From positions 248,001-312,000 of the forward strand of contig NIVC01000690.1 in NCBI GenBank assembly GCA_002269645.1: a stretch of DNA of 64,000 nt, read 5' to 3'. Origin of the DNA: Macrostomum lignano. Lineage: Eukaryota. The notes below the pieces were generated by a model, which did not search any database, had not been told where the DNA came from, and worked only from the letters and a program-made list of their open reading frames with translations. Made by a program: the position numbers and the translations under genes. The number at the start of each line of letters is the position of its first letter. The stretch's first letter is position 1. This document shows, piece by piece, positions 2,756 through 52,260 of this stretch.

Positions 2756-3035
<280 letters not shown>

Positions 3036-3495: not shown

Positions 3496-3605
<110 letters not shown>

Positions 3606-3744
3606 GAAATAAGTGGAAATATAATTTCTCTACGCTTGTATAAGTGCCGTCAAAATTTGTCTGACAAGAAGAGCTCCCGCACGACGAGTGTAATACTACA
3701 GAATCAGACCAAGGAAACATGAAGAATGTCTGCGTATTTATCAT

Positions 3745-4262: not shown

Positions 4263-4364
4263 GTTGCGTATTTTGAAAAATAATTCTAAATGTCTACCAC
4301 CTTTTTCAGAATTTTACCTGCCTAAAAATAAATATTGAATCTCAACCCTCTCTCTTCTCCATAG

Positions 4365-8840: not shown

Positions 8841-9019
8841 GCTGGCTGTTTTGACGGAGTCGCATTGAAGTTACGCTCGTGACACCCCTGTCCCCTGCTA
8901 TTATTAATCGGACCGAATATCCTCAAACATCCTGTTAGTTGGTCGCTGATCTGTGTAGCAGTAACACGTACGTTTGACAGCTTGAGACGCTTTGTAAACT
9001 TTTGTCTCTTTTGTATCCC

Positions 9020-10973: not shown

Positions 10974-17006
<6,033 letters not shown>

Positions 17007-26887: not shown

Positions 26888-29800
26888 GTTATACCCTCTC
26901 TTATGATGTTACTCGTATATTTCAATCTAAGCCACTGATGACAATTCGCTGTATCATCTATCGTTTTGATCTATTATATTAACTGATCGTTTTTCGTCGC
27001 TACTAAAAAATATAATAAACTTGGCCAACTAAGCAAGCGAAAATATATCAGTTTAATTGCATATTGGACTGCGCTACTACTTGCATTTTTCTGTTCTCTG
27101 TTTCAACTGTTTGGTCTTGTTCTGCCAAGGACTGCTACGCTGCGCCAGATTAAATTCGTCTCATTTAAATAAAGGTCCCACCAAGACACTGAATTAATTA
27201 AGTTAACAATCCCAACTGGTTTATTACTGCATCTGGATTCTGCACTTCAAGGGCTACATCTACTCTACATTCTACAATATTGGTTTGGCTATTATCGGAA
27301 TTGACAACTGTTTAATTTGTCTTATTCAACTGAGTCTGCGATTGCATCTGTTCTACAGCTTGGCATCAGGTCTACACTAGGCCTACAGCTTGGCACCTAG
27401 GTCTACAACTTGGCATAAGATCAATCAAATCTATTTCCAGGTAAGCCCCTTTTTGCCTGCTACTAGGGACCGTCTGGCAGATTAGCCTTGCTTGTGGGTT
27501 GCATGCTTGTTCTAGAATTAGGATTTAGGCTATTTTTGGGGTTTTCTTAATTTCTCTGCCAGAAATTTCTTTTTTTGTATTTGTGTGCTTTTATATCTGC
27601 TTTCTTCATTTTCCTCTGCATCACTCTCTGTCTTGAGCATTATGTCAACTGAGGCTGGGGAGGAGGCTCTTAGTGCAGCTGATGATAGGGCCACACGAGC
27701 TCCAGGAGAAGTGAAATCTGGCGAATCAATGTCGGATTCACATGATTCACATGTGGGCCTAAATACAGATGAATCATCACATTCAACAAACCTCTTACTT
27801 GAAAATACACTAGCTTCTCTGCACCGCATGCTAGAGGACCACTAAGCAGTAAAGGAGCAGCAAGGTCAACTGGATAGTGCCCAACATTGTGTTGCTCCTA
27901 TGGCTAGTATGGTTCGGTTGTGGCCACCACCACCTTATTCAGCCAATATGAAGTTTGATGTTTTTTTGGCATACTAATTAGCTGCCCATCAGGTACCTCC
28001 TGAACAACAGTCAGCCATCTTACTTTCCCTCTTGTCGCCAGTGTCAAGAATTTTTCCTCAATATTGAGCTTGATAAAAAGGCATGTTCAAAGGCGCTTTA
28101 GGCACTGCGCAACCGCTATACTGATGTTAACCTTCAACAGAAAAGTTATATGGAGCTTGTAGCAGCCGTCCAAAATAGTACAGAGACTATCTTAGACTTC
28201 TATGACCGTCTAGTATCTTATTCTCACTCAGCAGGCATGTCAGTAAACCAGGCTGAGCCGCTGCTAAAAGCCAGGTTCTGTCATGGGCTGCGAAACAAGG
28301 CATTGGCCGAGAGACTGATTCTGTGGAGTCAAGAAACACTTGGAGTCTCCTCAGCTGATCTAGTCCAAAAAGCTAAAGGTATGGTGGGGGTGCAGGAGTT
28401 GTTGCATTCATTTCCAGCACCAACAGCAGGTGCAACTGCTAACTTCCGATCAGTTGACCCAGCTAAGGATGCTTTAGAGGCCAGGGTAGCTGAACTTGAA
28501 AACATATTGCATCAACAGCAGCAGGTCAGGAGTCACCAACAGGATTACCCACCGCCGACATTCCCAGCGGCCCTGACTTCAACCGCTGTAGGAATTGGTA
28601 ATCCAGCTTTTGTCAGGCAGGTGAACCAACAATCTAACCCTATGCAAAGCCAAAACCCCCATCTGCAAAGCCAAGAGCGTGCCACCGCTGCGGGAACACT
28701 GATCACCTGGTCGCTGACTGCCCATGTCCGCCAGCGAATCAGAACAGTGCCAGGAGGCCAAAAGTGGGCCAACATTCTATTAGTACCACATCAGAATTTG
28801 GGAGAATTGTTTCTTGGAATCAGAAATACGGGTTTATCCAGTTAGAACAACTACCAGAGAAGCTGTTTGTCCATCATAGCCAACTTTCGGGCTTGCTGCA
28901 CCAACTGGCAGAGCACCGCCAGATCATTGGCACTAGGGTGCAGTTCCGAAGTCAGGTTGCTCCAGGTCGTGAACATGACCAGGCCTGTTCTGTCACGCAG
29001 TGTCAGGATACTTCACAAGTGCAGTGTAGTCAGGTAAATCCAGTTGAGGACCAATCTTTCGAGTCTAGTTACTTTGTGCAGTTGGTAATCGGGGAGAGTA
29101 AAATAATGGCTTGTCTAGGCTCTGGCGCCAACGCGAGTGTTATAAGCCAGCAGGTGATGGAGCGCCTTGTCTCTGCGGATCCAATTAATAATATCTTCAC
29201 TTCAAGCCGAAAAAATACTACTGCCACAGCATTCAATGGCTCAACAACTCAGATACTGGGAGCGCTGAGGTGTGAAGTAACACTAGGGAAGCTAAGCAAG
29301 ACTCATGTCTTCCTTGTCACCCAAGAGTCGACAGCAGAGGATCTGCTCGAAATCGACTTCCTTCGAAGTTTCCAGGTTGTGATTGACTTCACCGAAGGCA
29401 GAGCCCTTGTTGCAGGTGAAGCTGTCCCACTAGTTGAAGGGGACAAGGGTATCTTCCGTCTCCGCCGTGTGGTAGCTGGGTGCACCACAGAATTACCACC
29501 ACAATCCGAAACTTTAGTACCAAGTCGGGTTTTATACAATGCTCCAAATTTTCAAGGAATCATTCAATGCAAAATCTTCAACACCGACACCGAGTGCCTA
29601 GTAGCCCGCTCTGTCGACATGTCAAACCAGTCAAACCATGTGCTGGTCCGATTACTTAACAGTAGTGACCGGCCAACCCAGATTGAGCGCGGACAGGAAA
29701 TAGTATCGTTCCAGGAACTAGGCCAAGAGTAGTACAAACAACACTCAATGAACAAGACTTCTCTATTGACAACGTTGACAATTTAAATAGCAAGATAGCT

Positions 29801-30312: not shown

Positions 30313-31029
30313 TGTTCCTGTGCAGCTTATTTAGAAATTCCCCAGAGACCGTTTTTGCTCTTCCACTGCCGGCAAGACCTGCAAAGATTTGCCAATATAT
30401 ACCAAATAATTTTAAATCCCCAAATACTACAAATAGTGCTTACCTGCTTTGTGCTCTAAAGTTAGCACTAAAAAATAAATTTTAGAAATTTTTACTAGAA
30501 AAATGTCGAAATTACCCACTTATCAAAAATCGGCGGGCTCAACTGAGCCACCCAGCAAGCGCGCAAACAATCGTCAGTCCTCGGACTGGACTACTAAAAG
30601 TAGTGCTGCTGGCGGATCCTCTACGGCAATATCGAATGGTAGAGGCACAACAAGCCGTACGTCAGTGCCCCCGGCCCAAAGACGGCGCTCGTCCGCTGGT
30701 CCATCCAGCAAAACAACGCCGCCCATTGCACCATGCACATTAACACCAGGGTCGGACCACTCGTCGGCACCGAACTCTCCTGTGCTCACCAATCCAGCCG
30801 ATAGCGTACAACCGGAGGTTATTGAAATCCCGGCTGACTCTGACTCTAGCGGTACCAACACGGTTCTTTGAGGAGCCGGACCAGGTCACTGAGGACCAAG
30901 GCTCTGCAGAATCGGACGCTTCCAACAGTAACGACGCCGCTGATGATGTCGATGCGGACTCAGTGAGGTACCTCCAGAGTCCCATCGGCTTCCCTGTGCA
31001 CCCGGACCGAATCGGGGAAAATATCCAGC

Positions 31030-31570
31030 GCTACGGCGACGTCGTACTGGAGTACTATCCGAAGCTACTTGAATCTGTATCCAAACAGCTCTATGGCCGC
31101 CTAATAGCTGACCTACTGCCAAAGGCCGTCAGGCATCGGCCGCACAAGCAACGTAGGGTGGTATGGTACGGCCCCAGCTACTCGTACTCGGGCGTACCAT
31201 TAGAGCCCAACTAAAAGTGGCACCCGGCTGTCGAGGACCTGTGAGATTTCCTGGAGATCAACGCGGACCTCGGCATGCCAAAGTTTAATTCGTGCCTTAT
31301 AAATTTCTACGAATCAGCGGATGATAATATCCCGTACCACGCTGACAATGAGCCCGAGCTTGGCACCGATCCGTACATCGCCACAGTGTCGCTCGGGGCG
31401 GTACGAAACTTCCTGGTCCGGCAAAACAGTGACCACTGCATAATCGCGCGCTTTAGCACCGAGCCCGGCTCTGTCATCGTGATGGCTGGCGGGTGTCAGC
31501 GCAGGTGCCAGCACAGCGTCCCGTCTGTGGGCATGCAGGAGGGGGTGCGTATTTCACTCACCTTTCGAGT
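31030..31570 (+). pseudogene. AlkB (ALKBH2/3-like) 2OG-Fe(II) dioxygenase domain in LINE-A ORF1
   Basis: VVWYGPSYSYSG, NSCLINFY, YHAD (HxD), VSLG, QHSV (H), RISLTFR (R-x5-R); two in-frame stops at 31212 and 31242. Confidence 0.9.
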
Positions 31571-34500
31571 GACTCATCCACCTGGCAATGCCACGGCGGG
31601 GCGCGGAGGCCCAACAAGATCAGCAGCTGCACTCGTCGGTGATGAGCCTGGCAGTGGCCGGGCGGACGCCAGCCTGGCCGCGCCGGGCTCCCGGACAGCA
31701 GCAGCGAATGGGCAGCCAGGTGATCGTGGAGCCGCCGGAGCGTCCGGCTCTGCGGTCCCAGGCGGCTCTCGAGCCCAGGGCAACGACGGCGGCAACGTCG
31801 GCGGTGCAGGGCGGGGCGGCAGCCACCGCTCCTATGCTACCATGGCGGCTAGTCAGGATGTATCACGGCCACCTAACAATAACAGTGGGAATAGCAACGT
31901 GGTACCCGTAGTATTCAACACTGCGGCTGAAGCCAGCCAGATTGATTTTTTAAAGTGGCTCGCGGCCAACTTTCAAGGTTCGGCCCGGGCCACACTTACC
32001 AAAAAGTTAAATAATGAAGTCGGTTTCCTTGTCTTTCCGGCCACTCCGCGAGACCACCAGATTTTTCTACGTGGGCCTCTGCGTGAGCCCCAGTTCGTAG
32101 GGGGCCGGTTACAAGGCGGCTTCCGCGAGCGAGACCTGACCCACGAGCGAGGCAGACCGCGCCGCAGCGACCAGTGACCCAGGCGGTCCACTCTTTCGTC
32201 TTGCGCGGTGTGCCACCCGAGGTCAGAGCCGACGACTTTAAGCGGCACTTGCAAGACAATGCTGGTTTAAGAATCGTGTCTGCTAGTCGGATTATCGCTA
32301 AAAGAAACAACGAGCCCACCAACCTGGTGCGAGTATTCGGTTATAACAAACAAACAGAAGACGCCTGCCTTGCAACAGGCATTATAACAGATTTCACTAC
32401 CTATCAATGTGAACCAAGCAAGACTGCAACTCCTGCTCGCGCACCGCAGTGCCAAAATTGCCAGCGATTCGGCCATCACGCCCAGCGATGCAAGGCGGCA
32501 AAGCGTTGTAGAATTTGCGCGACCGAGCACCACTGGCGCGACTGCGACAATCAGGAGGCTGTAAAGTGCGCAAACTGCGGTGAGCCGCACCGTGCCAATT
32601 ATCGCAACTGCCAGGTGGCGGTCGACTGACATAGCGCGGCCCAAAGGCGTGCGGCTGCCTACGCAGCGGGCGCCCAAGAAGCCGCGGCAGCTACAGGCAG
32701 GTTGACCGCTCCACCACCTATTGCGGCAGCAGCGGCAGCAGCAGCAGCGGCGCTCCCCGCCCCCGCACTGAGACCAGCACCGGCGGCAGCATCGAGATCG
32801 GCCGACGCCGCAGCACGGGCGCCAATGGCGACAGGAGGCGATGACGATTCATCATGGCTCACCGACCCCGGCCTCCCTAGCCGAAAGCGCCCTGTGCGCG
32901 AATCGACCGACTCGGAGACACAGACAACTGCGCCGAATATGACATCTAACTATGATACGCCGCCAAATGCCAGAGGAGACTCTCAGCTTCAGGGACTGGT
33001 GAGTGGGTTCCTTCCCCTCCTGGTCCAGGCACTTGTTGAGGTGCTGACGCCCTCTGGCAGAGCCCGGCCGAACGGCCGCCTAATACTGAAAGCTCCCGTC
33101 AAACGGTGCAAGACGTAGTAGGTAGGGTTCTGGCCCGGGTCCTCGAAGGCGGGTCGGACAGTCACCAAGGCCTTGGTCAGCTGCTTGGCGCCTCCCGGCG
33201 ACAGGCGGGTGGCCAGACCTAGAATAATATAGGATAAATATGTTCGGTAATAACGGCACGATAGCTCAAACCCCACTGCCTCAGGGCTTAAGATCGGCCA
33301 CCTAAATTGCAGGGGGGTAGTACCGAAACTAAAAGAACTCAGGCTCTGGGTCTCAGACCAGAAGTTGGATATAGCGCTGTTTTCTGAGACCATCCTGAAA
33401 AATACTCATGTATGCACTTTCTCGAGCTATGCTGCAGTGCATCCTTCCGAGTGCAGACCTTCCGAATACGAAGCGCGGACTTCTCCTCGTACACACCCCA
33501 CGGGTAAAGGCAGCAGACGTCCAGCTCTCGTATGACAACGTCAACCATGAGGTCCTTACCTGCACGGTCACTCCTATTGACGGCGCGTGCCCAGCCTTCC
33601 AACTCTCCCTGGTGTATCGGTCCCCGTCGCCGGACAACCTTGACACAGGTCTATTGACTCGGCTGTCCTCGGCGAAGTACTCGCTTATTATGGGAGACCT
33701 GAATGCCAGGCACAGTTTCTTGGGGGGCGAAAGTCGCAACAACAGGGCAGGACAGCAGCTTCATGATTGGCTCGGTGGCGACCCGTCAAAACGCCCTACC
33801 GTCCTCAACCAACCAGGCCAGTTTACCAGAATAGCCCACCGGCAAGGCGTTGTGTCCCGGAATGTGCTGGATCTTGGATTAGCCTCTGGTGACCTCGTCT
33901 CCAACGTGCAAGACTTTGAAGTGGGCTCGGACCTGGATAGTGATTATCTCCCAATAATACTCACCCTGGCGAGTAACTCCCCAGATTGGCAAGGGCCGGA
34001 GAAGGCTCGAAACTTCGCCAAAGCCAACTGGGAACAGTTCCAAAACTCCTTGATGGAAAAACTGATACATGCGTGGCCTCCAGACCTGAACACCAGGCAG
34101 CAGATTGATGCGGAGGTTGAAGTCATCACGAACGCAATTCAGAAAACCATTAAGGAGAATGTCCCGGTCAGAAAAGGCCGTAGAGCCCTCCCCCAAAGGA
34201 TCATCGACATGATCAAGGAGAGGAGGAAGCTCCGGCGTCAATATCATAGTACTAAGGTTGACAATTTTAGGCTCCTCGCGAATAGGAAAGCGAAGGAAAT
34301 AAAAAGCGCAATTCATTCGTTTGAGCAGGGCCAATTTACCTAACTGTGCGAGAAAATAGTTGAAAAAAGTCAGTGCCGGAACGTCAAGGACTTCTGGCAG
34401 GACACAAAAAAATTTATGGGGCGCAACAAGGGCACCACTATCCCGTCCTTGAACGATGGCGCCACCCTCGCACATACTGACTCGGACAAAGCTGATATGC

Positions 34501-34745
34501 TAGCGAGAGCACTAGATGTCAAAATGCGCCCGATTCCATCAACCGACGAGGATCTGAAGAAGCGGGTTGAGCAGGTCATGAAGCTCCCCATCTTTAGACC
34601 AGTTCCTTCGGGCGTAGATCCGTACATGGGCCACCCCCCTGGAGGCTCCGTTCTCTGTCGCAGACACCCTCTGGGAGCTGGACCACCTAAAAGTTGATAG
34701 TGCTCCGGGCCTAGACAAAGTTCCGAACTGCGTCCTTAAACATGG

Positions 34746-35647
34746 TGTAGTGACTGGCTGCTAACTGGTTATTCAGCAGCATTCACTAGCTTTCCCTAAG
34801 AGTGCTGTGATCCGCTGCACAGTAGCTCAGTCCACCTGATCTAGTGAGAGAGTTACCCTGTGCTGGGCCTATGTGTTTACTGCCCAATGACTCATCGCCT
34901 GAGCGGGCGCGGGCAGCCACACTCAATGTCTTCCCACTCGCGCTGAGGAGGCGTTGCAGGATGACTCATCACCTGCGCGGAGTGTAAGGGCTGCCTAGAG
35001 GGAGTAAACAGGATGACTCATCCGCCCACGATTCTATTTTTAGCACAGACTAAGCACGTGACTGTGCACGCACTCTGTGCGTGGCCACTGACCTTGAGTC
35101 ACGCCACTGCTGCGTGACAGGGTTGCCTTATTGGGAAGTTGGCCTTGGATCACGCGTCGCCCGCATGATTCCAATGCCCAAATAAGGAAGTTTCACGCGC
35201 TCACCGCATGAAACTCACGTGACTTTTGGGGGTCCGCTCGGCTATAAATACGGAGCATCTGCGAGCCATTTTTCTCCAGATCGCGTCGTCCTGCCTGGGC
35301 TCGACCGGAGCTGCCTCCATGCCTCCGAGGTCTCCTCTCTCATTTCAGGTTTTCAGGTTCGAGCAGCATTCTACTAAGACGATCGACTGTCGAGACATTT
35401 TTCAGATTTGCCTTTGCTCCGAGCGACTTTGTTATTTTTCTTTCAGGTGACGGATAGACAACTCTGCCGACGCGTCAAGTCCGCACACCAAGGTGGCAGC
35501 AACCCTACCAAGTCACGGCAACGTTTTAGGTTCATTTTCAGGAAAATCGATGGGTAGTACTACGGTGCTATCTAGCTTCTTCAGGAGCAGCGGGTTTTAT
35601 TTTTCTAGGAACATCTTAGAGAACCCGAGAAGGAGAGGCACTTTACA
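34746..35647 (+). mobile_element. Solo LTR inserted in LINE-A ORF2
   Basis: TGTA...TACA ends and 4-bp TSD ATGG (34742-45 / 35648-51). Excision restores VLKHG-LAPIAVTRITKLFNDC in frame. TATA (ctataaata) near 35242 suggests + orientation. Confidence 0.88.
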
Positions 35648-37609
35648 ATGGCCTGGCGCCCATTGCGGTTACCCGCATCACCAAACTCTTCAATGATTGC
35701 TATCGTACGGGCATCTTCCCATCGTAGTGGAAAAAAGCGGTGGTGACGATGATCCCTAAACCAGACAAACCTCCTGAATCCCCGGGATCCTATCGGCCCA
35801 TCAGCCTGACCTCCTGTCTCGGCAAGGTCTTTGAGAAGCTATTGGTGAGGAGGCTGATGAAGCATCTTGAGGGCCAGGGTATCCTCGGCGCGGATCAATG
35901 TGCGTACCGGAAGGTCCACTCAACTTATGATAATCTTGTCTCGTCCAGGACGGCATTCTGAGCCCCTTCCTGTACCTGCTCTTTGTCAGCACCATGCCTC
36001 GGCCAAGACAACCAAACCTTAAGCGAAGCCAATTTGCCGATGACATGGCCATCTGGGCCTCGGCGGACTCCTTTGCTGGCCTCAAGACACTCCTGCAACC
36101 CTACCTTGACCGCGTGTGGAATTGGTGTGGGGGGCAGGGGATTAAGATCAACGCCAGCAAGAGTCAGGTTATCGCATTCAATTATAAGCCAACCCAGCGG
36201 CTCGACCTTCGCCCCAAGCTGAAACTTGGTGGCACGAGCCTTGAATACCAAGAAGAGGTCCGGTTCCTAGGCATGAACCTGGACTACAGGCTGACCCTTA
36301 ACTCGCATGTTGAAAGAGTAGTCAGCCATGGCCGGGCGCTTGCTCTGTCCATTAACCGCATTGCTAAGCTGACCCGGCTAAGCAGCAATACCCTCAAAGT
36401 GCTATACAGGGCTTATGTTGAGAGTGCGCTGACTTACGGTGCCCCGGTGCTGAATATCATAGCACCCAGTAATCTCAATAAGCTCCAGAAAATCCAAAAT
36501 TTAGCTCTCAGGATCTGCTATGGTGCCCCCAGTTACACCCAGGTAGCCTACTTGCATGAGCTGGCAGCCATGCCTATGGTGGCAGACAGGATTCGTGCCC
36601 TGGGCGTAGGCTGGCTCTTCAAGGTGAAGGCTGCTGGGCACCACGACTTCCACATAGAGCCGGAACTCGCTAGAGCTGCCCGTAACCGCCCCCCCCCCAG
36701 TGCTGAACCTGCTTTGGGAAAGCCTGAAGAGGAGGCGAGCAAATAGAAAGGCAGCTGCAAATGCGGCGGCCCGCGCGGCCCAAAACCCGCCCTAAACATG
36801 CTAGGTCAGCTGCCCAAAAACCTAGTGCGCACCCAGATAGTGGCTTCCCCTCTTTTTTACCCTCGATCTAGCTGTCTGTCAGCGCACAAACAAAAGGACC
36901 AATATAAATAATAGGCGTTGAATGTAACGGCGAGTGCTGGACCAGGCGGGTGGGCCTACGACCCCGTAATTATACAGTATATGTAGTTGTGCCTACCTGC
37001 AAGATCTAAAAATGCTGTGATCCGCCGTCGTCCTTCTTGCTCCTGAGTCCGCCTTTTTTATCCTCCTCTTTTACAATCCAACTGTTTTTAAAACTGCAAC
37101 TGCTCTCTTTTACATCCGGCTTTTGACCTGTTTTTACACAATATCCTAATAACCTTTTACCCAATATAGCAAGAATGCTTTTATTTACCACTTTTTAACA
37201 AAACGCGCCAACCTGGTTGCTTTAATTTATTACGTGCAGAAGTTGCTACTTGTAGTGGCTCTAGCCGCATTGCTACTATATTTTCCTTTTTATTTCCAAA
37301 ATTAACTTTATATACTTTTATTCTAAATATCGCGTTGATTCCCATCATGGTCCATATAGCTTTGTGAGGACCCGCCCCTCATTTTTATAGATTCTCCCCC
37401 TACTTATCAGTCGCGACCTTTTTCTTTTTTCTTTTATTCCTAAATGTAAATATCAATAATTTATACAAATACGTTTATACAAAGGGCTCGCCCATAGGGG
37501 CCAGGTCCCTTGTTTTTACCAAATTCTTCGACACACCATACTTAATTAAACCTTCGTTATCGTAAAGGTGTTAGAAAATCAATTGCAGCCAGACAAGCTC
37601 AAGGGCGGA

Positions 37610-38811
37610 TACATTCACTCACAGTAGTCAATAACCTTCGTTTGCCCATTACTTATAAACTGAACTGAACTTGGGAAAGCAACCGGCTGCAACCGGCTGA
37701 TTCGGCTCGCGCGATATCTGCAATCCGGCGCCAGGCTCGCTTGTCTCATAGATTCCTAGGTGTGGTTTAGAATTAAGGCCTTCTCTTGTATTTTCTAGTT
37801 ATATTACTACTATCAGTAGGCTAATTTACATTTACATTTTTTATTAAGTTTTAAGTTTTAAAGTTTCAAAGTTTTAAATAAGCCTAACGTTTTAAGGCTA
37901 AAATGCAGATGGAAGTAGAAGTTAGTAGTAAGAGAAGCGCAAGCTCTAGAAACACTGACTCGCCGCCAGTCAACACAAAGAAGGCCAACTGTCGAACATC
38001 GTCCGGCCCTGACCGACGACCTTGTCTTGCATCTAGCAATGAGCCGTCCTGCATTCAGCAGCAATCAGTAACTGAAGAGCCTCCTGCGGTCAACACCCAG
38101 GCAAGTGAGGGTAGGAGGGGTAGCTCTAGAGCAGACTCAACTGCAGTGTACCTACTGTCTAAACCTGATCTCACGGAAGACAAAGTCACTCAGCCACTAA
38201 CAAATTGCAAAATAAGATATATTCCGAACGCATTAAAAACAAGCGAAGCAAGACTCACCAAAATCCTAATAGACGAAGTTTTTCCAAAGGCCTTTCATTA
38301 TGTATCCGGCGGCAAACCTGAAGCTAGGAAGGTAGTGTGGTACGGTCCAGAGTACACCTACGGTGGCACAACGATTGAGGCCAACGATGCTTGGCACCCC
38401 GTAGTGACTCACTTAGCTTCCTGGCTGCACGTTGAGCTTAAGCTTCCATTGCCAAACTCGTGCCTGATCAACTTCTACAAGGATGGCACAGTTTCAATAC
38501 CGTGGCACTCCGATGACGAGCCTGAGTTAGGCATTGACCCGACCATAGTGTCGGCTTCTTTAGGAGCACAGAGGGATTTCCAACTCAGAACCAAAGGCGC
38601 AAGTCAGAATATTGTGCAATCGCAGAAACTTGCTTTTGTCTCACTGTCATGAGCGGAGCTACCCAAAGGCTCCTGCAACACGCAATTATCAGAGACACTA
38701 AGGTCAAGGACTTTAGGATCAATTTAACATATAGAATAACCAAAGACAGCAGAATCAACGACTCACCTATGCCTGCGCCGAATCCCTGCGTCCGACCTCC
38801 GAAGTCGAAAG
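37610..38811 (+). mobile_element. 5' fragment of a second AlkB-ORF1 element (LINE-B), truncated by Helitron sequence
   Basis: AT-rich leader; ORF 37903-38652 plus a 1-nt frameshift into 38649. Same layout as LINE-A ORF1: S/T/P-rich N-terminus, then AlkB (VVWYGPEYTYGG, NSCLINFY, WHSD, SLG, QHAI, RINLTYR). Downstream domains are absent, so LINE identity is inferred. Confidence 0.65.
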
Positions 38812-39015
38812 AGCTGCTTGACCTTTGCAAAAAAGCATGTTTTTCGAATATCTAATCCCTTTAGCATCGAGAGATTTCTTAGCCACGTTGCATGTACCGT
38901 CACGGAAAAACTTCTGATCGAACAGTGCAAGTTCGAAGAAAATCGTTTCAGCCGTTTTTGCTAAAATCGGTCACATAAATAGATATCTACCGACAGACCA
39001 TTTTTAGTATATGGA
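38812..39015 (-). mobile_element. Helitron 5'-terminal fragment
   Basis: Conserved subterminal core (ttgacctttgcaaaaaagcatg...aaatcg...acagaccatttttagtatatgga); the minus strand begins TCCATATACTA. Confidence 0.8.
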
Positions 39016-40964
39016 CTAGCAGTCAACGCCCCCCGCTGGGGAGCAAAAGAAATGCAATACAGGTTTTTTAATAAGCAACATGTAGCTAAGCCTTGAAATC
39101 TTAAAAAATCTCCTGTCAAACTTCTAACCACAACCCCAACCCTAACCATAACCCTAAATTTAATATTTTGTTCACGAGTTTTTGCATGATGCTTGCATTA
39201 TTTTTTTCATGACGCTTCCATAAACATTTTTAATAGGCTACATGAGCTAAGTTATAAGCTATCCTAACCCTAGCCATAAGCCAAATCTTAACGCTATACC
39301 CTGAACCTAACACTAAACCTTGAAACCCTAACACTAACCCTGCAGCCTGACTTTTGCACAAGTTTGTGAAGCGCTTATGCACCAAGTTTTTGTGAACAGA
39401 ATATTCTCAGTGACATGAAATATTTGAAGCTTTATTTATTTCCGCCATAGCAAATCACTACAAAAAACGTGGATATACGCGTACCATTTAATACTTGCAT
39501 ACTTTAAGTGTAGGATGATACAAAACTGCGTGAATAAATTCGCCGAACTATTAAACATTTCTGTTAGTTTCACGATTATTATAAACAGTACATGCACAAA
39601 GTAGCAGTACTGTTCAACTGTACTGTTACGAGCTACAACAAACAAAAAACAACAAACGGTACGAACTTATAATTAAATTTTAAACAACCGAAAATTGACA
39701 TTTAGCAGTTAAAACAATATTTAAACCAACACATGTATTTATTCAAATGATACGATATGATCTTCTGCTGCTAAGACGAGCGTAGCAGATAAAAACGTGC
39801 AATAATGTAATAATTTATAACAAAAGGATCGACTGTCGCTTCAGCAGATGGTGCCATCGACAAGCAGCCAGTATAGCTTTAGCAGTACAAAAATGTACAT
39901 GTATATGCCATCCTGACTACCTGCCGACTCGCGTCACTGCTCAATTGCATGCATTGGGTGTAAGCAAAGGTAGACATTCATTCTCAAACCAAACATTAAG
40001 TCGCTCCGCTCTGCTTAAGGCTGCTACAGAGCTTGACTGCAAATGCTCCTTTTAGAGTCTGGAACCACAGGGTATATAGAGCAGCTCCTATACACCATTC
40101 ACAAACTCTTTTAGCCCAGTTAAGATGCAGTCAACCTACTCTCAATGAGGGCTGCTTTATAAATTCCAATTATACATACATGTTTCACCTGCTTATATAT
40201 ACCTGTACTATTATCTGTTTACTGACTGTATTTTATGGTCTGTTCAGCGACTGTATTAGTGACTGTATTATTGTCTGTTAGAGACTGTATTGTCTGTTTA
40301 GAGGCTGTATTGTCTGTTTAGAGGCTGTACTAGCGGTACCCCCACCCTTCGGGTGTTCCCATCCATCTAAATTCCATCAGGCCAAATTCACACACATTGC
40401 AACTCCTTGCCATGGACGTTGAAATCAGCAAAAAAAATTTCATTTTGCTGATGTCAATTAAATCAAGACCTACGTTGTTCAACTTTCTAGAAAGATTTAT
40501 TATCTCTATCGTTATTGTACCCAATTTTCCTATTGGTTACAATGCAGGGGATTCATCCATCCCCTCTCCTACTCATCCATCCCCTCTCCCATCCATCCAT
40601 CCATCCTCCTCCCACTCTCACCCATCCCATCTCCCTCTTTATCCCACCGTTTCATTCATCCCCTCTCCCTCTTATCCCCCTCTCAGCCATCCCGTCTCTC
40701 CCTTATCAATGCAATTTTCATTGGCCATCGCGTCAGTTGCCCGTAATTGCAGGTGTAACAGGAAAAAACAACTCTCAGTGCCTCTATTATCTTCTCTCCC
40801 TCTTTTCTCCACGACTTCTTGTCTCGGTTGTCCTTCTGTGCGTCTTCTCTCTTAGAATTTCAGCACGCAGCTGAAAATGCGTGAAGAAATAAGAACGAAA
40901 TAAAATATTTTTCCAATTCTCTCATTTGTGTATTTTTCAATTCTCATTCTCCCATTCTCTCTCA

Positions 40965-41700: not shown

Positions 41701-42252
41701 ATGTCTCAGCAACCGACAAATAGGCCGGATAGCTACCCCGAGATGTTTGAGAAGCAACGACGAGGAATGGAACAACACATGAAGACCTTCATGGAGAAAG
41801 CTTCGAACATCGTCCGTCATCAGGAGACGATAGCCCAACAAGAATCCGACAGGAAATCTGCCCTGGCTGAGCTGGTTGCACAGCAGCAATGCGAAATCGC
41901 GCAGCTACGAAGAACGGTTTCTGAACTGCGGGACGAGCTCACCATCGTACAAGCTGAGCGAGACGAGCTTGCGACTGTGCGGAAGGAGCTGGCAACCGTG
42001 CGTGACGAACGCGACCACCTGGAGTCCGTGCTTGGACGGCAGCTTGAAGAGAGCTGCCCTGAGGATGAGTCCTCTCCCCGCAAGCGAGCCCGACATAGCG
42101 AGGATGCGGACCCGGCTGCATCAACTGAGACGTCAACAGCCGAGCCACTGGACGGAACAGAGGTGCAAGAACAGATCGCGAATGCAAGCCAAACCTCCGT
42201 GATGTCTCTGGACGAGTCCGGCTCTGCGGGAAGGTCTTCAATGGACAGTTAG
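41701..42252 (+). CDS. Orphan intronless 183-aa predicted coiled-coil protein with NLS-like PRKRAR
   Basis: ATG-to-stop ORF, GC-rich relative to flanks, heptad-like E/Q/R/L pattern, TATA-like gctatatatt ~120 nt upstream. Confidence 0.55.
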   Translation: MSQQPTNRPDSYPEMFEKQRRGMEQHMKTFMEKASNIVRHQETIAQQESDRKSALAELVAQQQCEIAQLRRTVSELRDELTIVQAERDELATVRKELATVRDERDHLESVLGRQLEESCPEDESSPRKRARHSEDADPAASTETSTAEPLDGTEVQEQIANASQTSVMSLDESGSAGRSSMDS

Positions 42253-43579
42253 AGGTGTTGCCACACTGCGTAAAACAGAATGCAAAAAAATGCTACTGAA
42301 CCACTTGTATGAGTCTCGTGCATGGTAGATCCCATCCGAGGAAGCTACTTTATTGACTGATGGCATAGTAAGTTTCCCAAAATTGTAGTTAATTAATACA
42401 TACTATAGTATAGTTTGTTATACACGCAATGATACATCTTGCAGCGGATCACTTATTACACCACTACTATTTTTTTACGACAATGACAGTGACAAAAAAA
42501 ACAAATTCACCTACGGTATTAGGATACGGACTCAGATCTGTTGTGCTTCTTTATCGAGGCGAGGATAGCCTGCTATGCTGTTTAATTGCTGCGTTAAGTA
42601 ATACTTCTCGTGTTTGTTATTCTTTCCTGACATATTTGTATGAAATGACTCTGTGTGCATGGAATAGTATATGCGAACGGATTTAACATCCCATTGACGA
42701 ATTTTCCCACAGAATTTAACTGTGCGCAGTTTTACATGCCAATTTCGATGCATGGACGGATGGCAAAATGAAAAAAATATATGGAAAGCGCCAATGAAGT
42801 GACCATTTGGTAAACTTACATTATCCATATGACAGTGGGATAAATGTGAGATAGAGAGGGAGATGGGATGGGTGAGAGTGGGAGGAGGATGGATGGATGG
42901 ATGGGAGAGGGGATGGATGAGTAGGAGAGGGGATGGATGAATCCCCTGCATTGTAACCAATAGGAAAATTGGGTACAATAACGATAGAGATAATAAATCT
43001 TTCTAGAAAGTTGAACAACGTAGGTCTTGATTTAATTGACATCAGCAAAATGAAATTTTTTTTGCTGATTTCAACGTCCATGGCAAGGAGTTGCAATGTG
43101 TGTGAATTTGGCCTGATGGAATTTAGATGGATGGGAACACCCGAAGGGTGGGGGTACCGCTAGTATTATATATATACTATTTTACGACAAATACCAGAAA
43201 AGCGTATATATTTAGCTTTGTTAGAAATTTGGTGATTACATTTTTTACATGAAGCAAATTTTTACATGTGTATGTATCAATTTCGCTAGTGCAAAAATAA
43301 GCTACGCTGTATAATGCAATGTTTTTCCTGCATGGCTTTCATTATGCGGTGATCAAGGCATTCATTCAGATGGTGAACGAAACTTTGCAGAAGTTAATAA
43401 AATTGCACACGATGAACAGATAAGTGTATGGATAACAGTGCAGTATTGCAGTAAGGAGGCAAACAATTTTTTTAACAGCGTTCCTAACAAATACAAGCCG
43501 TTAGTATGCCAGGAAATGCAAAATCGATAATGTCTTTGTCGCATCAATGTAAACTAATGTATAGCACGACAAGAAATTC

Positions 43580-44170
43580 CTATGAGAGAACAGGCTTCAG
43601 AACGACATTCCGAGTCTTGTTGTCAGGAGCCAATACGCGAATGTTTTTGGGATCACGGGCTCTGCTCAAGGCAACATACAATTGTCCATGCTGAAAGCAA
43701 GAGAGAATCAAATGTACACCAAAAAAGTCCAGAGTCTGGCCTTGGCTCTTGTGGACCGTGATAGCAAAACAAGGACGAACAGGAAACTGGAGCCGTCGAA
43801 ATACAATCGGTAAGTCAGCCGTACTTGGCTCCAATGGAATGCGTGGCAAAAACACCTGTTCACCTTTGTACGCTCCAGTTGCAATCCTCGCGACCAGTAC
43901 ATTGGGCTCCAGTTTGGTCACGATCAGTCGGCTGCCGTTGCACAGGCGAGGCGGGTGCAGATTCCGCAGCAGCATCACCGGCATACCCACCTTGAGTCGA
44001 AGCAGATGTTGCGGCAGTCCAGGAGGATCCAGGCTGTTGAGAGACTCCACGGGAAACTGGGTAGCCGCATCTTCATCATTCGGGATGGAGTCGAACGACC
44101 GGTACTCGACCCCTTCGCCAGGGAAGAGCTCCAGGCAGGCAGCGTTGATTTAAAGTTGAGCGTTGAGGTA
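43580..44170 (-). pseudogene. Helitron PIF1-family helicase C-terminal half
   Basis: LKVGMPVMLLRNL, LCNGSRL, LPRIPL, RLQFPVRPCFAITVHKSQGQTL, HGQLYVALSR. Confidence 0.93.
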
Positions 44171-47175: not shown

Positions 47176-47415
47176 TTGTCTGTTTAGAGACTGTATTGTC
47201 TGTTTAGAGACTGTATTGTCTGTTTAGAGACTGTATTGTCTGTTTAGAGACTTTATTGCCTGTTTAGAGACTGTATTGCCTGTTTAGAGACTGTTTAAAT
47301 ATTGATTTCCAAAAAATAGATTAACTGAACACCCGTCTAACCTAGTAACCTTCTAACAAACTTTATTATACGAGTTACGAGTAATAATCAACTAAATTTG
47401 TAAAAAATCACTCAC

Positions 47416-48587
47416 CTTTTTGCCATTTCCGAAGTCCCTCACAATTTCCTTCGAGTGTTTGTCATAAAACTCAAACAAGGCAGCAGGCTCCCGAATGGTG
47501 GTCACACTTTCGTCTCCAATCTCATCAGCACCAAGTCCTTGAGTAGGCACTGGAGCGGGCACAGGTTCAAACCGGGTATCGCCTTCCTTTGCATTTCTAT
47601 ACCAGTCAGCCAAGACTCTGGCTTCACCATCGTCACTGTTGCATTTTACGTCAGAGTTCGAGCATCCCAACGTGACGGAGCCCGAATACTCCTGCAACTT
47701 TGCCCTTCTTATGGACAAAACATCGCCGATGTTCCACCTGTCCACTTGAGCTGAGGACGAACCCCAAAACGTGCAGCTTACAGAGCCGAAGGTTCGGTCA
47801 ACCAAAGTCACTTTGGCTACGTTAACCTTCTTCCCAGAACGCGTTCGGACTTCTTCAGACGGTTGCCTGGCGTCGATCACTCCAAGCACATAGACGATTC
47901 TGATAGTGAAAGGGGGCAATACTTTTTTTTAACTATTTGCACACTAACTTAAGCATCACATTAGATTTCTAAAGTATTTGTACACTAACAGGAGCATCAT
48001 AAAACTAATAACCCAGGCTTCGTACAGTGTTGCGATGATAAATATTTTCAAACACAAGACAAACTAACTGTCACCCAAAACACTATTACATGTACTTTCA
48101 CTCCGCGATATTTGAGCACTAATACACGACGAAAACTCATTCACCTGTCCAATCCAGTCTGTTGAAGTTGATTAATGCTAGTGTAATTAATTACTGGATC
48201 TCGAGCAACCGGCACTTCGTTGCTTCTATAGATGAAGCCATTTGAATCCACGGAAACGGTCATCTCAAGTGGATTGTCCGTACACTTGTACTCTGGCTTG
48301 GCAGTCTTCACCATCCCGCCGGATATGCGAACAGCTTCAGCATCGTTGCAGACTTCCCAGACACCTTGCAGGTCCTTACCGAAGACGCTGACTCGCATCT
48401 CAGATGAGTCGTCCACCAAGATGAACGAAAAAACTTGGCCCTGACCTTTGTTGTTATTATACGTGTGAACGTCTTTCAGGTTCGTCACAAGGCCAGTGAC
48501 AGGCGTAGGCATTTGACCAGCTGTCAGACCAGCAATCCCATCCTTCTTCGACTTCTTTTTCAAAGGTGACTCTGAATAAGAGGCCAT
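47416..48587 (-). CDS. RPA70-like two-OB-fold ssDNA-binding protein, copy 1 (exons 48587-48145, 47899-47416; last exon probably ~39880-39841)
   Basis: VFSFILVDDSSEMRVSVF (DBD-A like), TLVDRTFGSVSCTFWG, VLSIRRAKLQEYSG and EARVLADWY (DBD-B like); phase-2 GT-AG junction is in frame. Confidence 0.85.
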
Positions 48588-49930: not shown

Positions 49931-50589
49931 GTTCGACTGAATAAATTTACTCAAATACGCTCGTATACTCAATAATATACTTTCTTATTTCACATTTTTG
50001 ACTTTTGATAAAAATCAGTGATTGACTTACTTAATTTCTCAGAATTTTGAAACGCTGACGCACCAGTACAAAGTTTTGTGAACAGAATACTCTAATGACT
50101 TGAAATATTTAAAGTATAATTCATTTCCGCCATAGCATGTCATTACAAATAATGACCATACATATACACGTGCGAACAAAGAATGGAATGGTTTTTTTAA
50201 TAAGCTACATGCAACGTTGAAATCTTAAAAAAATCTCTTGTCAAACTTCTAACCCTAACCCTAACCATAACCTTAAATTTAATACTTTGTTTAGGAGTTT
50301 TTGCATGATGCTTCTTTGATTTTTTGCAACAAATTTTTGCATCTGCACAGTCCATGTACAAAATAACAGTTTTATTCAACTGTACTGTTACGAACTACAA
50401 CAAATAAAGAAACAACAAACGGTACGAGCTTTTAATTAGATTTTAAACAACCGAAAATTGACGTTCATAATTGAAACAATAGTTAAACAAACGCATGTAT
50501 TTATTCAAATGATATAATATGATCTTCTGCTGCTAATAGCAGGTGAAAATTTAAAGTAATGTAATAATTAACTAACAAAAGGATAGACT

Positions 50590-51630
50590 GACGCTTCTAT
50601 GAATTCTTTAAATGACGCTTCTATGATTTTTATATGACGCTTCTATGATTGTTGAAATGACGCATCTATGATTTTTATATGACGCTTCTATGATGTTTTA
50701 AATGACGCTTTTATGATTGTTTATATGACGCTTCTCTGATTTTTTACATGACGCTTCTATGATTGTTTACATGACACTTCTATGATTGTTTACATGACGC
50801 TTCTCTGATTTTTTACATGACGCTTCTATGATTGTTTACATGACGCTTCTATGATTGTTTACATGACGCTCCTATGATTTTTTACATGACGCTTCTATGA
50901 TTTTTCACATGACGCCTCTATGATTTTTTACATGACGCTTCTATGATTTTTTAGATGACACTTCTATGATTTTTTACATGGCGCTTCTTTGATTGTTTAC
51001 ATGACGCTTCTATGATTTTTTGCATGACGCTTCTACGATTTTTACATGACGCTTCTATGACTTTTTTATATGACGCTTCTATGATTGTTTACATGACGCT
51101 TCTATGACTTTTTTATATGACGCTTCTATGATTGTTTACATGACGCTTCTATGATTTTTTACATGACGCTTCTATGATTTTTTGCATGACGCTTCTACGA
51201 TTTTTACATGACGCTTCTATGACTTTTTTACATGACGCTTCTATGATTGTTGAAATGACGCATCTATGATTGTTTACATGACGCTTCTATGATTTTTTAA
51301 ATGACGCTTTTATGATTGTTTACATGACGCTTCTATGATTTTTTAGGTGACGCTTCTATGTTTTTTAAATGAGGCTTCTATGATTTTTCTTGACGCTTCT
51401 ATAATTGTTTACATGACGCTTCTATGATTTTTTACATGACGCTTCTATGATTGTTTACATGACGCTTCTATGATTTTTTACATGACGCTTCTATGATTGT
51501 TTACATGATGCTCCTATGATTTTTTGCATGACGCTTCTATGATTTTTCACATGACGCTTCTATGATTTTTTAAGTGACGCTTCTATGATTTTTTAGATGA
51601 CGCTTCTATGATTTTTTACATGGCGCTTCT
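50590..51630 (+). repeat. 21-22-bp minisatellite (tttacatgacgcttctatgatt)
   Basis: Same unit as 18040-18880. Confidence 0.95.
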
Positions 51631-52260
51631 TTTTAAAAAGTCTTTTAGTTTTCCTGACGTTGAAAAGCTTTAATTAAAAAAAATTATACTCTATGAAAAT
51701 TCGAACCATCGTCGCTGCTTTAGCAGTTCAGTTTGTTCACCTCTAGGCTAGCTCTCATCTTTTGATAACATCAAATTTTGCACTTAAATAATTCAACACT
51801 TTAAAATCCAAGCATAGAGTAAATCACACGAGGCAGTTATGACATAATCAGTTTCTCAGTCAGTCAGTATCAGTTAACAATATGGTTACGCAATTTAAAT
51901 CAATTCTGGTGCTACGCTTCCACACTGCATTTTCAATTCAAGTCGGAGTTACAATTCAGTTATGATGCAATCTATTTCAGAATCAGAATTCAACCAGTCA
52001 GTTTTTTCTCTAGCATTCTTACAATGCGTTTCAAGTCGAAAAGTTTGCTTGACCTTTGCAAAAAAGCATGTTTTTCGAATATTAAATGCCTTTAGCATCG
52101 AGCAATTTCTTAGCCGCGATGCATGTACAGTCACGGGAAAATTTCTGATCGAACAGTGCAAGTTTGAACAAAATCGGTCCAGCCATTTTTTCTCTAATCA
52201 ATCACATAGATAGATAGATAGACACAGACAGACCATTTTTAGTATATTGGATGGAAAGGA

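What the first reader, a model, noticed from the sequence alone, without database searches (positions are those of the whole stretch)
37903..38735. Second, divergent AlkB-led ORF about 1 kb downstream: evidence for a family
Seen: same architecture (S/T/P-rich N-terminus, then AlkB) and shared motifs VVWYGP-x-Y-x-Y-x-G, NSCLINFY, HxD-x-EPELG-x-DP, QH and R-x5-R, but clearly different sequence elsewhere. Only one frameshift (~38635). Inference: AlkB-ORF1 is an old, selected feature of a lineage of elements, not an accident. Shared motifs suggest common descent.
Basis: partly seen in the sequence, partly recalled or inferred. Interest (0 to 1): 0.8.

Follow-up and report, generated by a model that had tools for sequence, protein, structure and literature searches.

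The report
Broken AlkB-carrying LINE retrotransposon fragment
This is the broken front end of a second, divergent member of a flatworm group of LINE-type jumping genes whose RNA-binding ORF1 protein starts with an AlkB (ALKBH3-like) demethylase domain, an arrangement I could not find described in the searchable literature.

Summary
Window 37903-38801 (+) encodes a Ser/Arg/Pro/Thr-rich leader of about 85 aa, then a complete AlkB domain (Pfam PF13532, E 2.4e-24). It is interrupted by one 1-nt frameshift next to a T4 run (~38631-38637). It is 38% identical (BLASTP 3e-41) to the AlkB domain of the upstream element (30822-31570).

Several of them (RK-x-x-W-[YF]-GP-x-Y-x-Y, NSCL-x-N-[FY]-Y) are signatures of a retroelement-specific AlkB group.

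The inference is supported from outside the window:
- The closest relatives are Macrostomum lignano proteins with AlkB, linker, RRM-like and CCHC regions.
- Intact elements on public contigs carry an AlkB-led ORF1 of 843-962 aa directly followed by an APE-RT ORF2 (L004, L008, L009, and near-intact L007).
- The nearest ORF2 relative examined without AlkB (L010) has an ordinary CCHC ORF1.
- AlkB is the most conserved ORF1 segment between two intact elements.

This copy itself is dead. Family homology stops at 38801, where the interior of an unrelated repeat begins, and no CCHC, APE or RT of this element exists in the window.

The fold and sequence are ALKBH3/ALKBH2-like. The likely role is removal of RT-blocking base methylation (1-meA, 3-meC) from the element's own RNA or cDNA; this is inferred, not shown. 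No paper describing AlkB in non-LTR elements was found.

The parts
37540..37902 (+). Probable 5' UTR of element 2. The boundary with the 3' UTR of element 1 is not resolved.
   Evidence: No other copy was available to define the 5' end. Alignment with the head-to-tail junction of the M. lignano tandem copies (L007 16170/16171) gives only weak similarity around window ~37510-37540. An (AAGTTTTA)n-like motif at 37846-37878 resembles the 'tagtttag' motifs in the L007 5' UTR. Tentative.
37903..38157 (+). ATG and low-complexity Ser/Arg/Pro/Thr-rich N-terminal leader of ORF1 (aa 1-85).
   Evidence: Translation and composition. The segment SRNTDSPP resembles SRDTDSPP in the M. lignano relative P0001.
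38164..38735 (+). AlkB (ALKBH3/2-like 2OG-Fe(II) dioxygenase) domain with all Fe and 2OG ligand motifs, broken by one frameshift.
   Evidence: Pfam PF13532, E 2.4e-24. PDB sequence search: ALKBH3 E 6e-22, ALKBH2 E 1e-10. AF2 model pLDDT 87, with best Foldseek hit human ALKBH3, E 1.4e-16, TM 0.72-0.81. Motif coordinates.
38631..38637 (+). Single frameshift, equivalent to loss of 1 nt at or next to a T4 run.
   Evidence: Frame 1 reads ...SQKLAFVSLS*. Frame 3 reads CLTVMSGATQRLLQH..., which matches relatives (SQRLASGSLLVMSGATQ).
38736..38801 (+). Post-domain tail (ITKDSRINDSPMPAPNPCVRPP), still homologous to the M. lignano family. This is the last element-2 sequence.
   Evidence: tblastn with P0001 and P0002 aligns up to 38798-38825. 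Alignment shows NPCV[KL]P conserved.
38802..39041 (+). Unrelated dispersed repeat joined at an internal point. It marks the 3' truncation of element 2 and supplies the fortuitous last 18 codons and stop (38853-38855).
   Evidence: Copies at 52033-52286, 54982-55155 and 62305-62511 (82-88% identity) extend further upstream than the join, with sequence that element 2 lacks.
30503..36746 (+). Element 1 (context): degenerate full-length AlkB-LINE. Layout: S/T/P-rich leader 30503-30871; AlkB 30822-31570 (stops at 31212 and 31242); G/A-rich linker plus 'VVPVVF' region; RRM plus three CCHC-type knuckles 32174-32629; APE 33408-34343; RT 35740-36746.
   Evidence: RRM fold of 32174-32626 from an AF2 model plus Foldseek. 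66-75% DNA identity of the RT region to M. lignano L007.

Best explanation
Window 37903-38801 is the 5' portion of a copy of a second, divergent family of APE-type non-LTR (LINE) retrotransposons from a Macrostomum-like flatworm genome. It comprises a probable 5' UTR, the low-complexity leader and the AlkB domain of ORF1. In this group ORF1p has the architecture leader, AlkB, low-complexity linker, conserved 'PV(I/V)FE' region, RRM, three CCHC-type knuckles and a tail.

This copy is dead. It has one frameshift, and everything 3' of codon ~300 (linker, RRM, CCHC, all of ORF2) has been lost at a junction with the interior of an unrelated repeat at 38802.

Shown here:
- The domain identity, the intact catalytic motifs and the truncation.
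- The full ORF1 architecture in the nearest relatives.
- The physical linkage of AlkB-ORF1 to APE-RT ORF2 in intact elements elsewhere.
- The stronger conservation of AlkB than of the rest of ORF1.
- The absence of AlkB in the nearest ORF2 relative examined that lacks it (L010).

Inferred mechanism for intact family members (about 50% confidence). ORF1p binds the element's own RNA in cis through its RRM and CCHC modules. That places the ALKBH3-like dioxygenase on the template, where it oxidatively removes 1-methyladenine and 3-methylcytosine. These lesions or marks stall reverse transcriptases, so clearing them from the RNA, and possibly from the single-stranded cDNA, would let target-primed reverse transcription run to full length. 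This is the role proposed for AlkB domains in plant RNA-virus replicases.
For: - Domain: Pfam E 2.4e-24. ALKBH3 is the best solved relative by sequence and by fold.
- Catalytic positions: HxD...H, N/Y and R-x5-R are invariant.
- Family placement: element 2 groups with M. lignano P0001 and P0122 at 98% bootstrap; element 1 groups with P0124 at 96%.
- Architecture: P0122 and P0270 show AlkB, linker, RRM-like and CCHC-type regions.
- Linkage to ORF2: L004, L008, L009, L007.
- Outgroup: L010, at 31% ORF2 identity, has a 402-aa CCHC ORF1 without AlkB.
- Selection: the AlkB segment has the lowest pN of the ORF1 segments.
- Signatures found only in the retroelement AlkBs.
- Truncation.
- RRM fold of the ORF1 C-terminal part of element 1.
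- Analogy from the literature: AlkB in Alpha-/Betaflexiviridae and Closteroviridae with proposed RNA repair, and an ALKBH5-like ORF in orchid Ty3/Gypsy elements, as summarised in PMC9289625.
Against: - The window copy has no RRM, CCHC, APE or RT, so its assignment to a LINE rests on homologues.
- The 5' boundary is undefined.
- Monophyly of all retroelement AlkBs has only 21% bootstrap.
- The RT clade was not named. ORF2 relatives drop to 31% identity or less after three close hits, and few carry names.
- No enzymatic, expression or transposition data exist. Substrate preference (1-meA/3-meC versus m6A, RNA versus DNA) is extrapolated from similarity to ALKBH3/2.
- The organisms behind the Logan contigs are unknown.
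Confidence: 0.85

Rival explanations
1. A stand-alone AlkB gene derived from the retrotransposon. On this reading the truncated ORF (318 aa if the frameshift is a homopolymer sequencing error) is expressed as a free ALKBH3-like enzyme for the host or for other elements.
For: The ORF starts with ATG and has no in-frame stop. The only defect lies at a T4 run. All catalytic motifs are intact. Some M. lignano database proteins are AlkB-only (P0001 436 aa, P0002 352 aa).
Against: Its C-terminus is supplied by the interior of an unrelated dispersed repeat, which looks like an accident of rearrangement. P0001 and P0002 are fragmentary gene models of the same family as P0122/P0270, which carry the full ORF1. 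No second copy of this truncated form was found. It sits in a TE-dense, satellite-rich region.
Confidence: 0.06
2. A host ALKBH3/ALKBH2 paralogue or processed pseudogene that lies beside a LINE by chance.
For: ALKBH3 is the best solved-structure match. Animal ALKBH3 proteins score about as well as bacterial AlkBs against the profile.
Against: Its nearest relatives by a wide margin (160-410 bits versus 137 bits or less for everything else) are retroelement ORF1 proteins. It shares their specific signatures and lacks the animal ALKBH3 insertion and the PWxQ motif. It also has the same leader-plus-AlkB layout as element 1.
Confidence: 0.02
3. Same element identity, but a different job for the AlkB domain. 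It might erase m6A or another regulatory mark to escape host epitranscriptomic silencing. It might repair 3-methylcytosine in DNA, in a host that keeps DNMT1/3. Or it might act only as an extra nucleic-acid-binding module.
For: The orchid Ty3/Gypsy AlkB is an m6A demethylase in vitro (PMC9289625). m6A affects LINE-1 activity (PMC7873242, abstract). M. lignano is reported to retain DNMT1/3 and ALKB2 (PMC9246332).
Against: Sequence and fold are much closer to ALKBH3/2 than to ALKBH5 or FTO (E 1e-16 versus 1e-7). Strict conservation of Fe/2OG ligands argues against a purely structural role.
Confidence: 0.3

Closest known systems
Jockey/I-type APE non-LTR retrotransposons with RRM + CCHC ORF1p ('type I' ORF1 of Khazina & Weichenrieder; recalled from knowledge)
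   Same: Two ORFs. ORF1 has an RRM (fold confirmed for element 1) and three CCHC-type knuckles. ORF2 has APE plus RT and no RNase H. The nearest ORF2 relative examined without AlkB (L010) has exactly this ordinary layout. One named distant hit is 'transposon X-element'.
   Different: ORF1 is two to three times longer (843-962 aa versus ~400 aa). It begins with a low-complexity leader and an AlkB dioxygenase domain. The exact RT clade was not determined. The window copy retains only the leader and AlkB.
Human ALKBH3 (and ALKBH2), 1-meA/3-meC demethylases
   Same: Best sequence match (E 6e-22) and best fold match (TM 0.72-0.81). HxD...H and R-x5-R are conserved.
   Different: About 31-34% identity. 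The ORF1 AlkBs have a shorter segment around W-[YF]-GP-x-Y-x-Y, a Cys in NSCL, no PWxQ motif and no ALKBH3-type insertion after the RxK strand. They are fused to a retrotransposon ORF1. Orthology is unresolved, because bacterial AlkBs are equally close.
AlkB domains in plant RNA-virus replicases (Alpha-/Betaflexiviridae, Closteroviridae)
   Same: An AlkB domain embedded in the replication protein of an RNA-templated replicon. RNA repair is proposed to protect the template (PMC9289625 discussion). These replicases appear among the structural matches.
   Different: Different replicon type and host kingdom. The structural match is weaker than to giant-virus and cellular AlkBs. There the domain sits in the polymerase polyprotein, not in an RNA chaperone.
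Orchid Ty3/Gypsy (Ogre/Tat) elements with an ALKBH5-like ORF (PMC9289625)
   Same: A retrotransposon lineage that acquired and kept an AlkB-family dioxygenase.
   Different: That is an LTR element in plants, with a separate extra ORF and an ALKBH5-like m6A demethylase. Here it is a non-LTR element in flatworms, with an N-terminal fusion to ORF1p and an ALKBH3/2-like domain.

Membership tests
AlkB / ALKBH 2OG-Fe(II) dioxygenases (Pfam PF13532) | Profile match above the curated cut-off | tested here: met
   87.1 bits against a cut-off of 31.2, E 2.4e-24.
AlkB / ALKBH 2OG-Fe(II) dioxygenases (Pfam PF13532) | Fe(II) triad HxD...H and 2OG-binding N/Y and R-x5-R | tested here: met
   H-S-D at 38506-38514, QH at 38676-38681, RINLTYR at 38715-38735. 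These columns are invariant in the alignments.
AlkB / ALKBH 2OG-Fe(II) dioxygenases (Pfam PF13532) | Double-stranded beta-helix fold with an N-terminal nucleotide-recognition part | tested here: met
   AF2 model pLDDT 87.1, pTM 0.84. Foldseek against ALKBH3 gives E 1.4e-16, TM 0.72-0.81.
AlkB / ALKBH 2OG-Fe(II) dioxygenases (Pfam PF13532) | Uninterrupted reading frame or demethylase activity | tested here: not met
   One frameshift at ~38631-38637. Activity is not testable with these tools.
ALKBH3 orthologue group | Phylogenetic placement inside animal ALKBH3 | tested here: inconclusive
   The NJ tree puts the ORF1 AlkBs in their own clade (21% bootstrap), never with human ALKBH3 (0 of 100 replicates). 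Animal ALKBH3 and bacterial AlkBs are equidistant.
APE-type non-LTR retrotransposon (LINE) | Reverse transcriptase and APE endonuclease ORF2 downstream of ORF1 | tested here: not met
   Absent for element 2 in the window, which is truncated at 38802 with no further APE or RT matches. Present in relatives L004, L007, L008 and L009.
APE-type non-LTR retrotransposon (LINE) | ORF1 with nucleic-acid-binding modules (RRM, CCHC) | tested here: not met
   Lost from the window copy. Present in the nearest relatives P0122/P0270 and in P0123, P0125, P0127 and P0128.
APE-type non-LTR retrotransposon (LINE) | Multiple dispersed copies, 3' tail, target-site duplication | not testable with these tools
   The 3' end is missing and no eukaryotic genome collection could be scanned. 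At least four M. lignano proteins belong to the same family.
Retroelement-specific AlkB group (defined here) | Signatures [RK]-K-x-x-W-[YF]-G-P-x-Y-x-Y without the loop insertion; NSCL-x-N-[FY]-Y; no PWxQ | tested here: met
   Shared by both window copies and by P0001, P0123, P0126 and P0127. Absent from animal ALKBH3, an algal AlkB and bacterial AlkBs.

The most novel reading that the evidence does not exclude
A whole lineage of flatworm LINEs, and apparently a Penelope-like element as well, carries a catalytically active ALKBH3-like demethylase fused to the RNA-binding ORF1 protein. It would clear RT-blocking base methylation from their own template in cis. Together with plant RNA viruses and orchid Gypsy elements, that would make AlkB capture a recurrent solution among RNA-templated replicons. 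It would also point to RNA alkylation or methylation as a general barrier, possibly host-imposed, to retrotransposition.
Probability: 0.4. Interest if true: 0.75.

Novelty: new variant of a known kind. Interest (0 to 1): 0.62.

Why it matters
ORF1 proteins of LINEs are known as RNA-binding chaperones. The extra enzymatic domain I recall being described is the esterase of CR1-like elements (from memory, not checked here).

An AlkB dioxygenase fused to ORF1p would be a nucleic-acid repair or demethylation activity carried by a non-LTR retrotransposon. It would imply that base methylation (1-meA, 3-meC or regulatory marks) limits reverse transcription in vivo strongly enough to select for a dedicated eraser.

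The idea is directly testable with the intact ORF1 sequences found here. It would link retrotransposon biology to the AlkB domains of plant RNA viruses and to epitranscriptomic control of transposable elements.

It also matters for annotation. The M. lignano proteins are labelled only 'Fe2OG dioxygenase domain-containing protein', so they could be mistaken for host repair genes in surveys of ALKBH gene content.

Tried and rejected
- Exact-sequence contig look-ups for the window ORF and for P0001 and P0002 found nothing.
- A homology search with the whole ORF1 of element 1 was swamped by low-complexity words and returned one hit, P0121.
- The idea that P0001 fuses AlkB directly to the ORF2 N-terminus was dropped. 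BLASTP similarity to the element-1 ORF2 N-terminus is not significant, and P0122/P0270 show that P0001 is the same ORF1 with the middle missing.
- I tested whether element 2 resumes downstream after a nested insertion. No RRM, CCHC, APE or RT matches exist anywhere else in the window. The upstream part of the abutting repeat is not found near 36800-37900, so element 2 is not simply inserted into that repeat.
- An attempt to locate the boundary between the element-1 3' end and the element-2 5' end by aligning to the L007 tandem junction was inconclusive.
- The NJ tree could not resolve the donor of the AlkB domain.
- The RT clade could not be named from the homologue list.
- Literature searches found no description of AlkB in non-LTR or Penelope-like elements. 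The terms covered AlkB with non-LTR, ORF1, retrotransposon, Macrostomum, Penelope-like, and 2OG-Fe or dioxygenase domain. Subscription journals and Repbase are not covered.
- SRA run numbers of the Logan contigs are not mentioned in any searchable paper.
Both were redone.
Full report
**1. What is at the coordinates**

The window is eukaryotic and rich in transposable elements. On the plus strand an ORF starts at ATG 37903 and runs 249 codons to 38652. A second frame carries the continuation from about 38637 to a stop at 38853-38855.

Bridging the single frame change gives a 318-aa product. Residues 106-279 match Pfam 2OG-FeII_Oxy_2 (PF13532, the AlkB family) at E 2.4e-24, 87 bits against a cut-off of 31.

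The frame change is equivalent to the loss of one base at or next to the T4 run in GCTTTTG (38631-38637). Frame 1 reads SQKLAFVSLS*. Frame 3 reads CLTVMSGATQRLLQH, which matches relatives. A homopolymer sequencing error cannot be excluded.

The first ~85 residues are low-complexity (S 16, R 8, A 7, P 7, T 6).

**2. The upstream copy**

About 1.16 kb upstream lies a degenerate but complete non-LTR retrotransposon, element 1 (30503-36746). Its parts are:
- an S/T/P-rich leader;
- an AlkB domain (PF13532, E 2.3e-24) with two in-frame stops at 31212 and 31242;
- a G/A-rich linker;
- an RRM plus three CCHC-type knuckles (32174-32629);
- an APE endonuclease (33408-34343, PF14529);
- a reverse transcriptase (35740-36746, PF00078).

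A structure model of 32174-32626 has the beta-alpha-beta-beta-alpha-beta RRM topology and matches solved RRMs (TM 0.65-0.72 normalised to the target).

The two AlkB regions are 38% identical over 197 residues (BLASTP E 3e-41). They share no detectable DNA similarity. They are therefore old paralogues, not recent duplicates. tblastn finds no third AlkB in the window.

**3. The window copy of element 2 is a truncated fragment**

Homology to the nearest relatives ends at NPCVRPP (38781-38801). From 38802 the sequence belongs to an unrelated dispersed repeat, with copies at 52033, 54982 and 62305 (82-88% identity).

Those copies share further sequence upstream of the join that element 2 lacks. The join is therefore to the interior of that repeat, not to its end. 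The upstream part of the repeat does not reappear on the other side of element 2.

tblastn with the RRM-CCHC, APE and RT peptides of element 1, and with M. lignano relatives, finds nothing else in the window. So the linker, RRM, CCHC and all of ORF2 are missing. The last 18 codons and the stop are fortuitous. The 5' boundary could not be fixed.

**4. Relatives and architecture**

A protein search with element 2 gave two Macrostomum lignano proteins (P0001, P0002; 56-61% identity). After these it gave only free-standing AlkBs about 200 aa long, mostly bacterial.

A profile of the four retroelement AlkBs, run against 1.84 billion cluster representatives, separated a small top group (160-410 bits) from the bulk (137 bits or less). 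The top group comprises:
- M. lignano P0122 (and its cluster member P0270) and P0124 (and P0271);
- Logan-assembly proteins P0123 (757 aa), P0125 (962 aa), P0127 (892 aa), P0128 (843 aa) and P0126 (and P0273).

Their sequences show one conserved layout: leader, AlkB, low-complexity linker, a conserved '...PV(I/V)FE...F..WL..NF' region, an RRM-like region, three CCHC-type knuckles and a C-terminal tail.

P0122 and P0270 are the family of element 2 and have this full layout. The window copy therefore lost it. P0121 and P0129 (70% identical to element 1) and P0124 belong to the family of element 1.

**5.

- L004 (9079 bp): an intact 843-aa AlkB-ORF1 at 1752-4283 and an intact 948-aa APE+RT ORF2 at 4710-7556.
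- L008: a 962-aa AlkB-ORF1 immediately followed by an APE ORF.
- L009: a 5'-cut ORF1 (AlkB C-terminal half, linker, RRM-like, CCHC) followed by an intact 946-aa APE+RT ORF2 that is 56% identical to the M. lignano ORF2.
- L007 (M. lignano NIVC01002892.1): two head-to-tail copies, 99.7% identical, unit 6457 bp. Each has AlkB, RRM/CCHC and a 926-aa ORF2. Its RT region is 66-75% identical in DNA to element 1.
- L010: the closest ORF2 relative I examined outside this group (31% identity). It has an ordinary 402-aa ORF1 with CCHC knuckles and no AlkB.

AlkB was therefore added to the N-terminus of a conventional Jockey/I-type ORF1. None of the hits is an intron-containing host gene.

**6. Evidence of selection and common descent**

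All Fe(II) and 2-oxoglutarate ligand positions (HxD, distal H, N/Y, R-x5-R) are invariant across the retroelement AlkBs and their cellular relatives.

Between the two intact ORF1s of L001 and L004, synonymous sites are saturated (pS 0.7-0.8). The AlkB segment has the lowest non-synonymous divergence of any ORF1 segment:

| Segment | pN | aa identity |
|---|---|---|
| AlkB | 0.24 | 61% |
| RRM/CCHC | 0.29 | 56% |
| leader, linker, tail | 0.41-0.42 | 34-42% |

In an NJ tree of the 138-column core, element 2 joins P0001 and P0122 (98% bootstrap) and element 1 joins P0124 (96%). All ten retroelement AlkBs form one clade, but with only 21% bootstrap.

Independent support for one origin comes from features shared by all six lineages and absent from animal ALKBH3, algal and bacterial AlkBs:
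- [RK]K-x-x-W-[YF]-GP-x-Y-x-Y with no loop insertion;
- Cys in NSCL-x-N-[FY]-Y;
- loss of the PWxQ motif;
- no ALKBH3-type insertion.

**7. What kind of AlkB**

Among solved structures, ALKBH3 is best by sequence (E 6e-22), ALKBH2 is next (E 1e-10), and E. coli AlkB is below threshold.

The AF2 model (pLDDT 87, pTM 0.84) matches human ALKBH3 at E 1.4e-16 (TM 0.72-0.81), then ALKBH2. E. coli AlkB, ALKBH5, ALKBH6 and FTO come only at about 1e-8 to 1e-7.

In the viral library, giant-virus AlkBs match best and plant RNA-virus replicase AlkB domains match more weakly.

The donor is unresolved. Animal ALKBH3 (for example from Antedon and emu) and bacterial AlkBs are about equally distant.

**8. Likely mechanism**

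Shown: an ALKBH3/2-like catalytic domain with intact ligands, fused N-terminally to the RRM/CCHC RNA-binding modules of ORF1p, kept under purifying selection in intact two-ORF elements.

Inferred from established knowledge of ALKBH3 and AlkB (repair of 1-meA and 3-meC in single-stranded DNA and RNA; these lesions block reverse transcriptases): ORF1p bound in cis to the element's RNA brings the dioxygenase to the template and clears RT-blocking methylated bases before or during target-primed reverse transcription. The same logic was proposed for AlkB domains of plant RNA viruses (as summarised in PMC9289625).

Alternatives are erasure of a regulatory mark such as m6A, as for the orchid Gypsy ALKBH5-like protein, or repair of 3-meC in DNA in a host said to retain DNMT1/3 and ALKB2 (PMC9246332). 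The window copy itself is non-functional.

**9. Comparison with what is known, and novelty**

AlkB domains are known in plant RNA-virus replicases and in one orchid Ty3/Gypsy lineage (PMC9289625). Seven completed full-text searches found no description of AlkB in non-LTR or Penelope-like retroelements. Repbase and subscription journals could not be checked.

The M. lignano proteins are annotated only as 'Fe2OG dioxygenase domain-containing protein' or 'hypothetical protein'.

I rate this as a new variant of a known kind: an ordinary Jockey/I-type LINE with a previously unremarked enzymatic ORF1 module. The specific finding, a dead truncated copy, is modest on its own. Its value is that it correctly pointed to a family.

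**10. Limits**

- The RT clade was not named.
- The organisms of the Logan contigs are unknown.
- The window's species is inferred to be Macrostomum (M. lignano or a close relative) only from best hits.
- There are no functional data.

Noticed in passing
L006 (Logan SRR19430222 contig, 7477 bp): ORF1 2120-5158, ORF2 5266-7398: A 1012-aa ORF has a helix-rich N-terminal part and an AlkB domain carrying the retroelement signatures (RKTLWYGPEYAY, NSCLLNFY). It lies directly upstream, on the same strand, of a 710-aa ORF with Penelope-like RT motifs (LPKIHK, RPIVS) and a GIY-YIG nuclease (weak Pfam hits; precomputed DUF8422 and HTH_animal). The contig ends repeat each other (1-71 matches 7438-7477), as expected for a tandem Penelope-like unit. 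The AlkB ORF1 module therefore seems to occur in a Penelope-like element too.
   Followed up: partly
L007 9714-21146 (M. lignano NIVC01002892.1): Two full-length AlkB-LINE copies lie directly head to tail, 99.7% identical, with a unit of 6457 bp. In the window, two divergent AlkB-LINE families also lie head to tail 1.16 kb apart. I did not resolve whether this reflects an insertion preference for the ends of existing copies or plain tandem duplication.
   Followed up: partly
window 34740-35677: The ORF2 of element 1 carries about 940 bp that have no counterpart in the M. lignano relative (L007 14221 to 14254). This is probably a nested insertion that splits the APE-RT linker.
   Followed up: no
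window 38802-39041, 52033-52286, 54982-55155, 62305-62511: A dispersed repeat of about 240 bp with four copies. Two of them are preceded by long satellite arrays (50589-51630 and 52645-54610; related array at 18020-19148).
   Followed up: partly
window 39124-39350: Degenerate CTAACC/CCCTAA-like (telomere-repeat-like) tracts just downstream of the truncation point.
   Followed up: no
window 40328-40647 and 42846-43165: 320-nt inverted repeat arms, 99% complementary. They enclose (TC)n and (CA)n microsatellites and a 183-aa ORF (41701-42252) whose sequence looks coiled-coil-like and which has no Pfam hit. This is a foldback or TIR-type element.
   Followed up: partly
window 43580-44050 (-) and 47392-47919 (-): A Pif1-type helicase fragment (PF21530, E 4e-18) and an RPA OB-fold fragment (PF16900, E 5e-11). 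Together they suggest Helitron remains.
   Followed up: no
window 12447-15880 (-): Exon-like ORFs with two AAA ATPase domains plus an AAA lid. This looks like a host gene with two AAA domains and is the only obvious non-TE gene seen.
   Followed up: no
window 28150-29732 (+): Gag-like and aspartyl-protease ORFs with a weak cold-shock-domain hit. This is an LTR-retrotransposon fragment that abuts the 5' side of element 1.
   Followed up: no
window 1320-2534 (+): A 404-aa ORF with a weak GIY-YIG hit (E 0.0014). It is possibly a fragment of a Penelope-like element.
   Followed up: no
window 3800-10106: Blocks of tandem repeats explain the extreme GC skew at 4-8 kb: a 21-bp satellite (3800-4267), a 1.5-kb purine-rich (GAGAG)n array (5253-6752), a 46-bp satellite (7263-7837) and 20/34-bp repeats (9018-10106).
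   Followed up: yes
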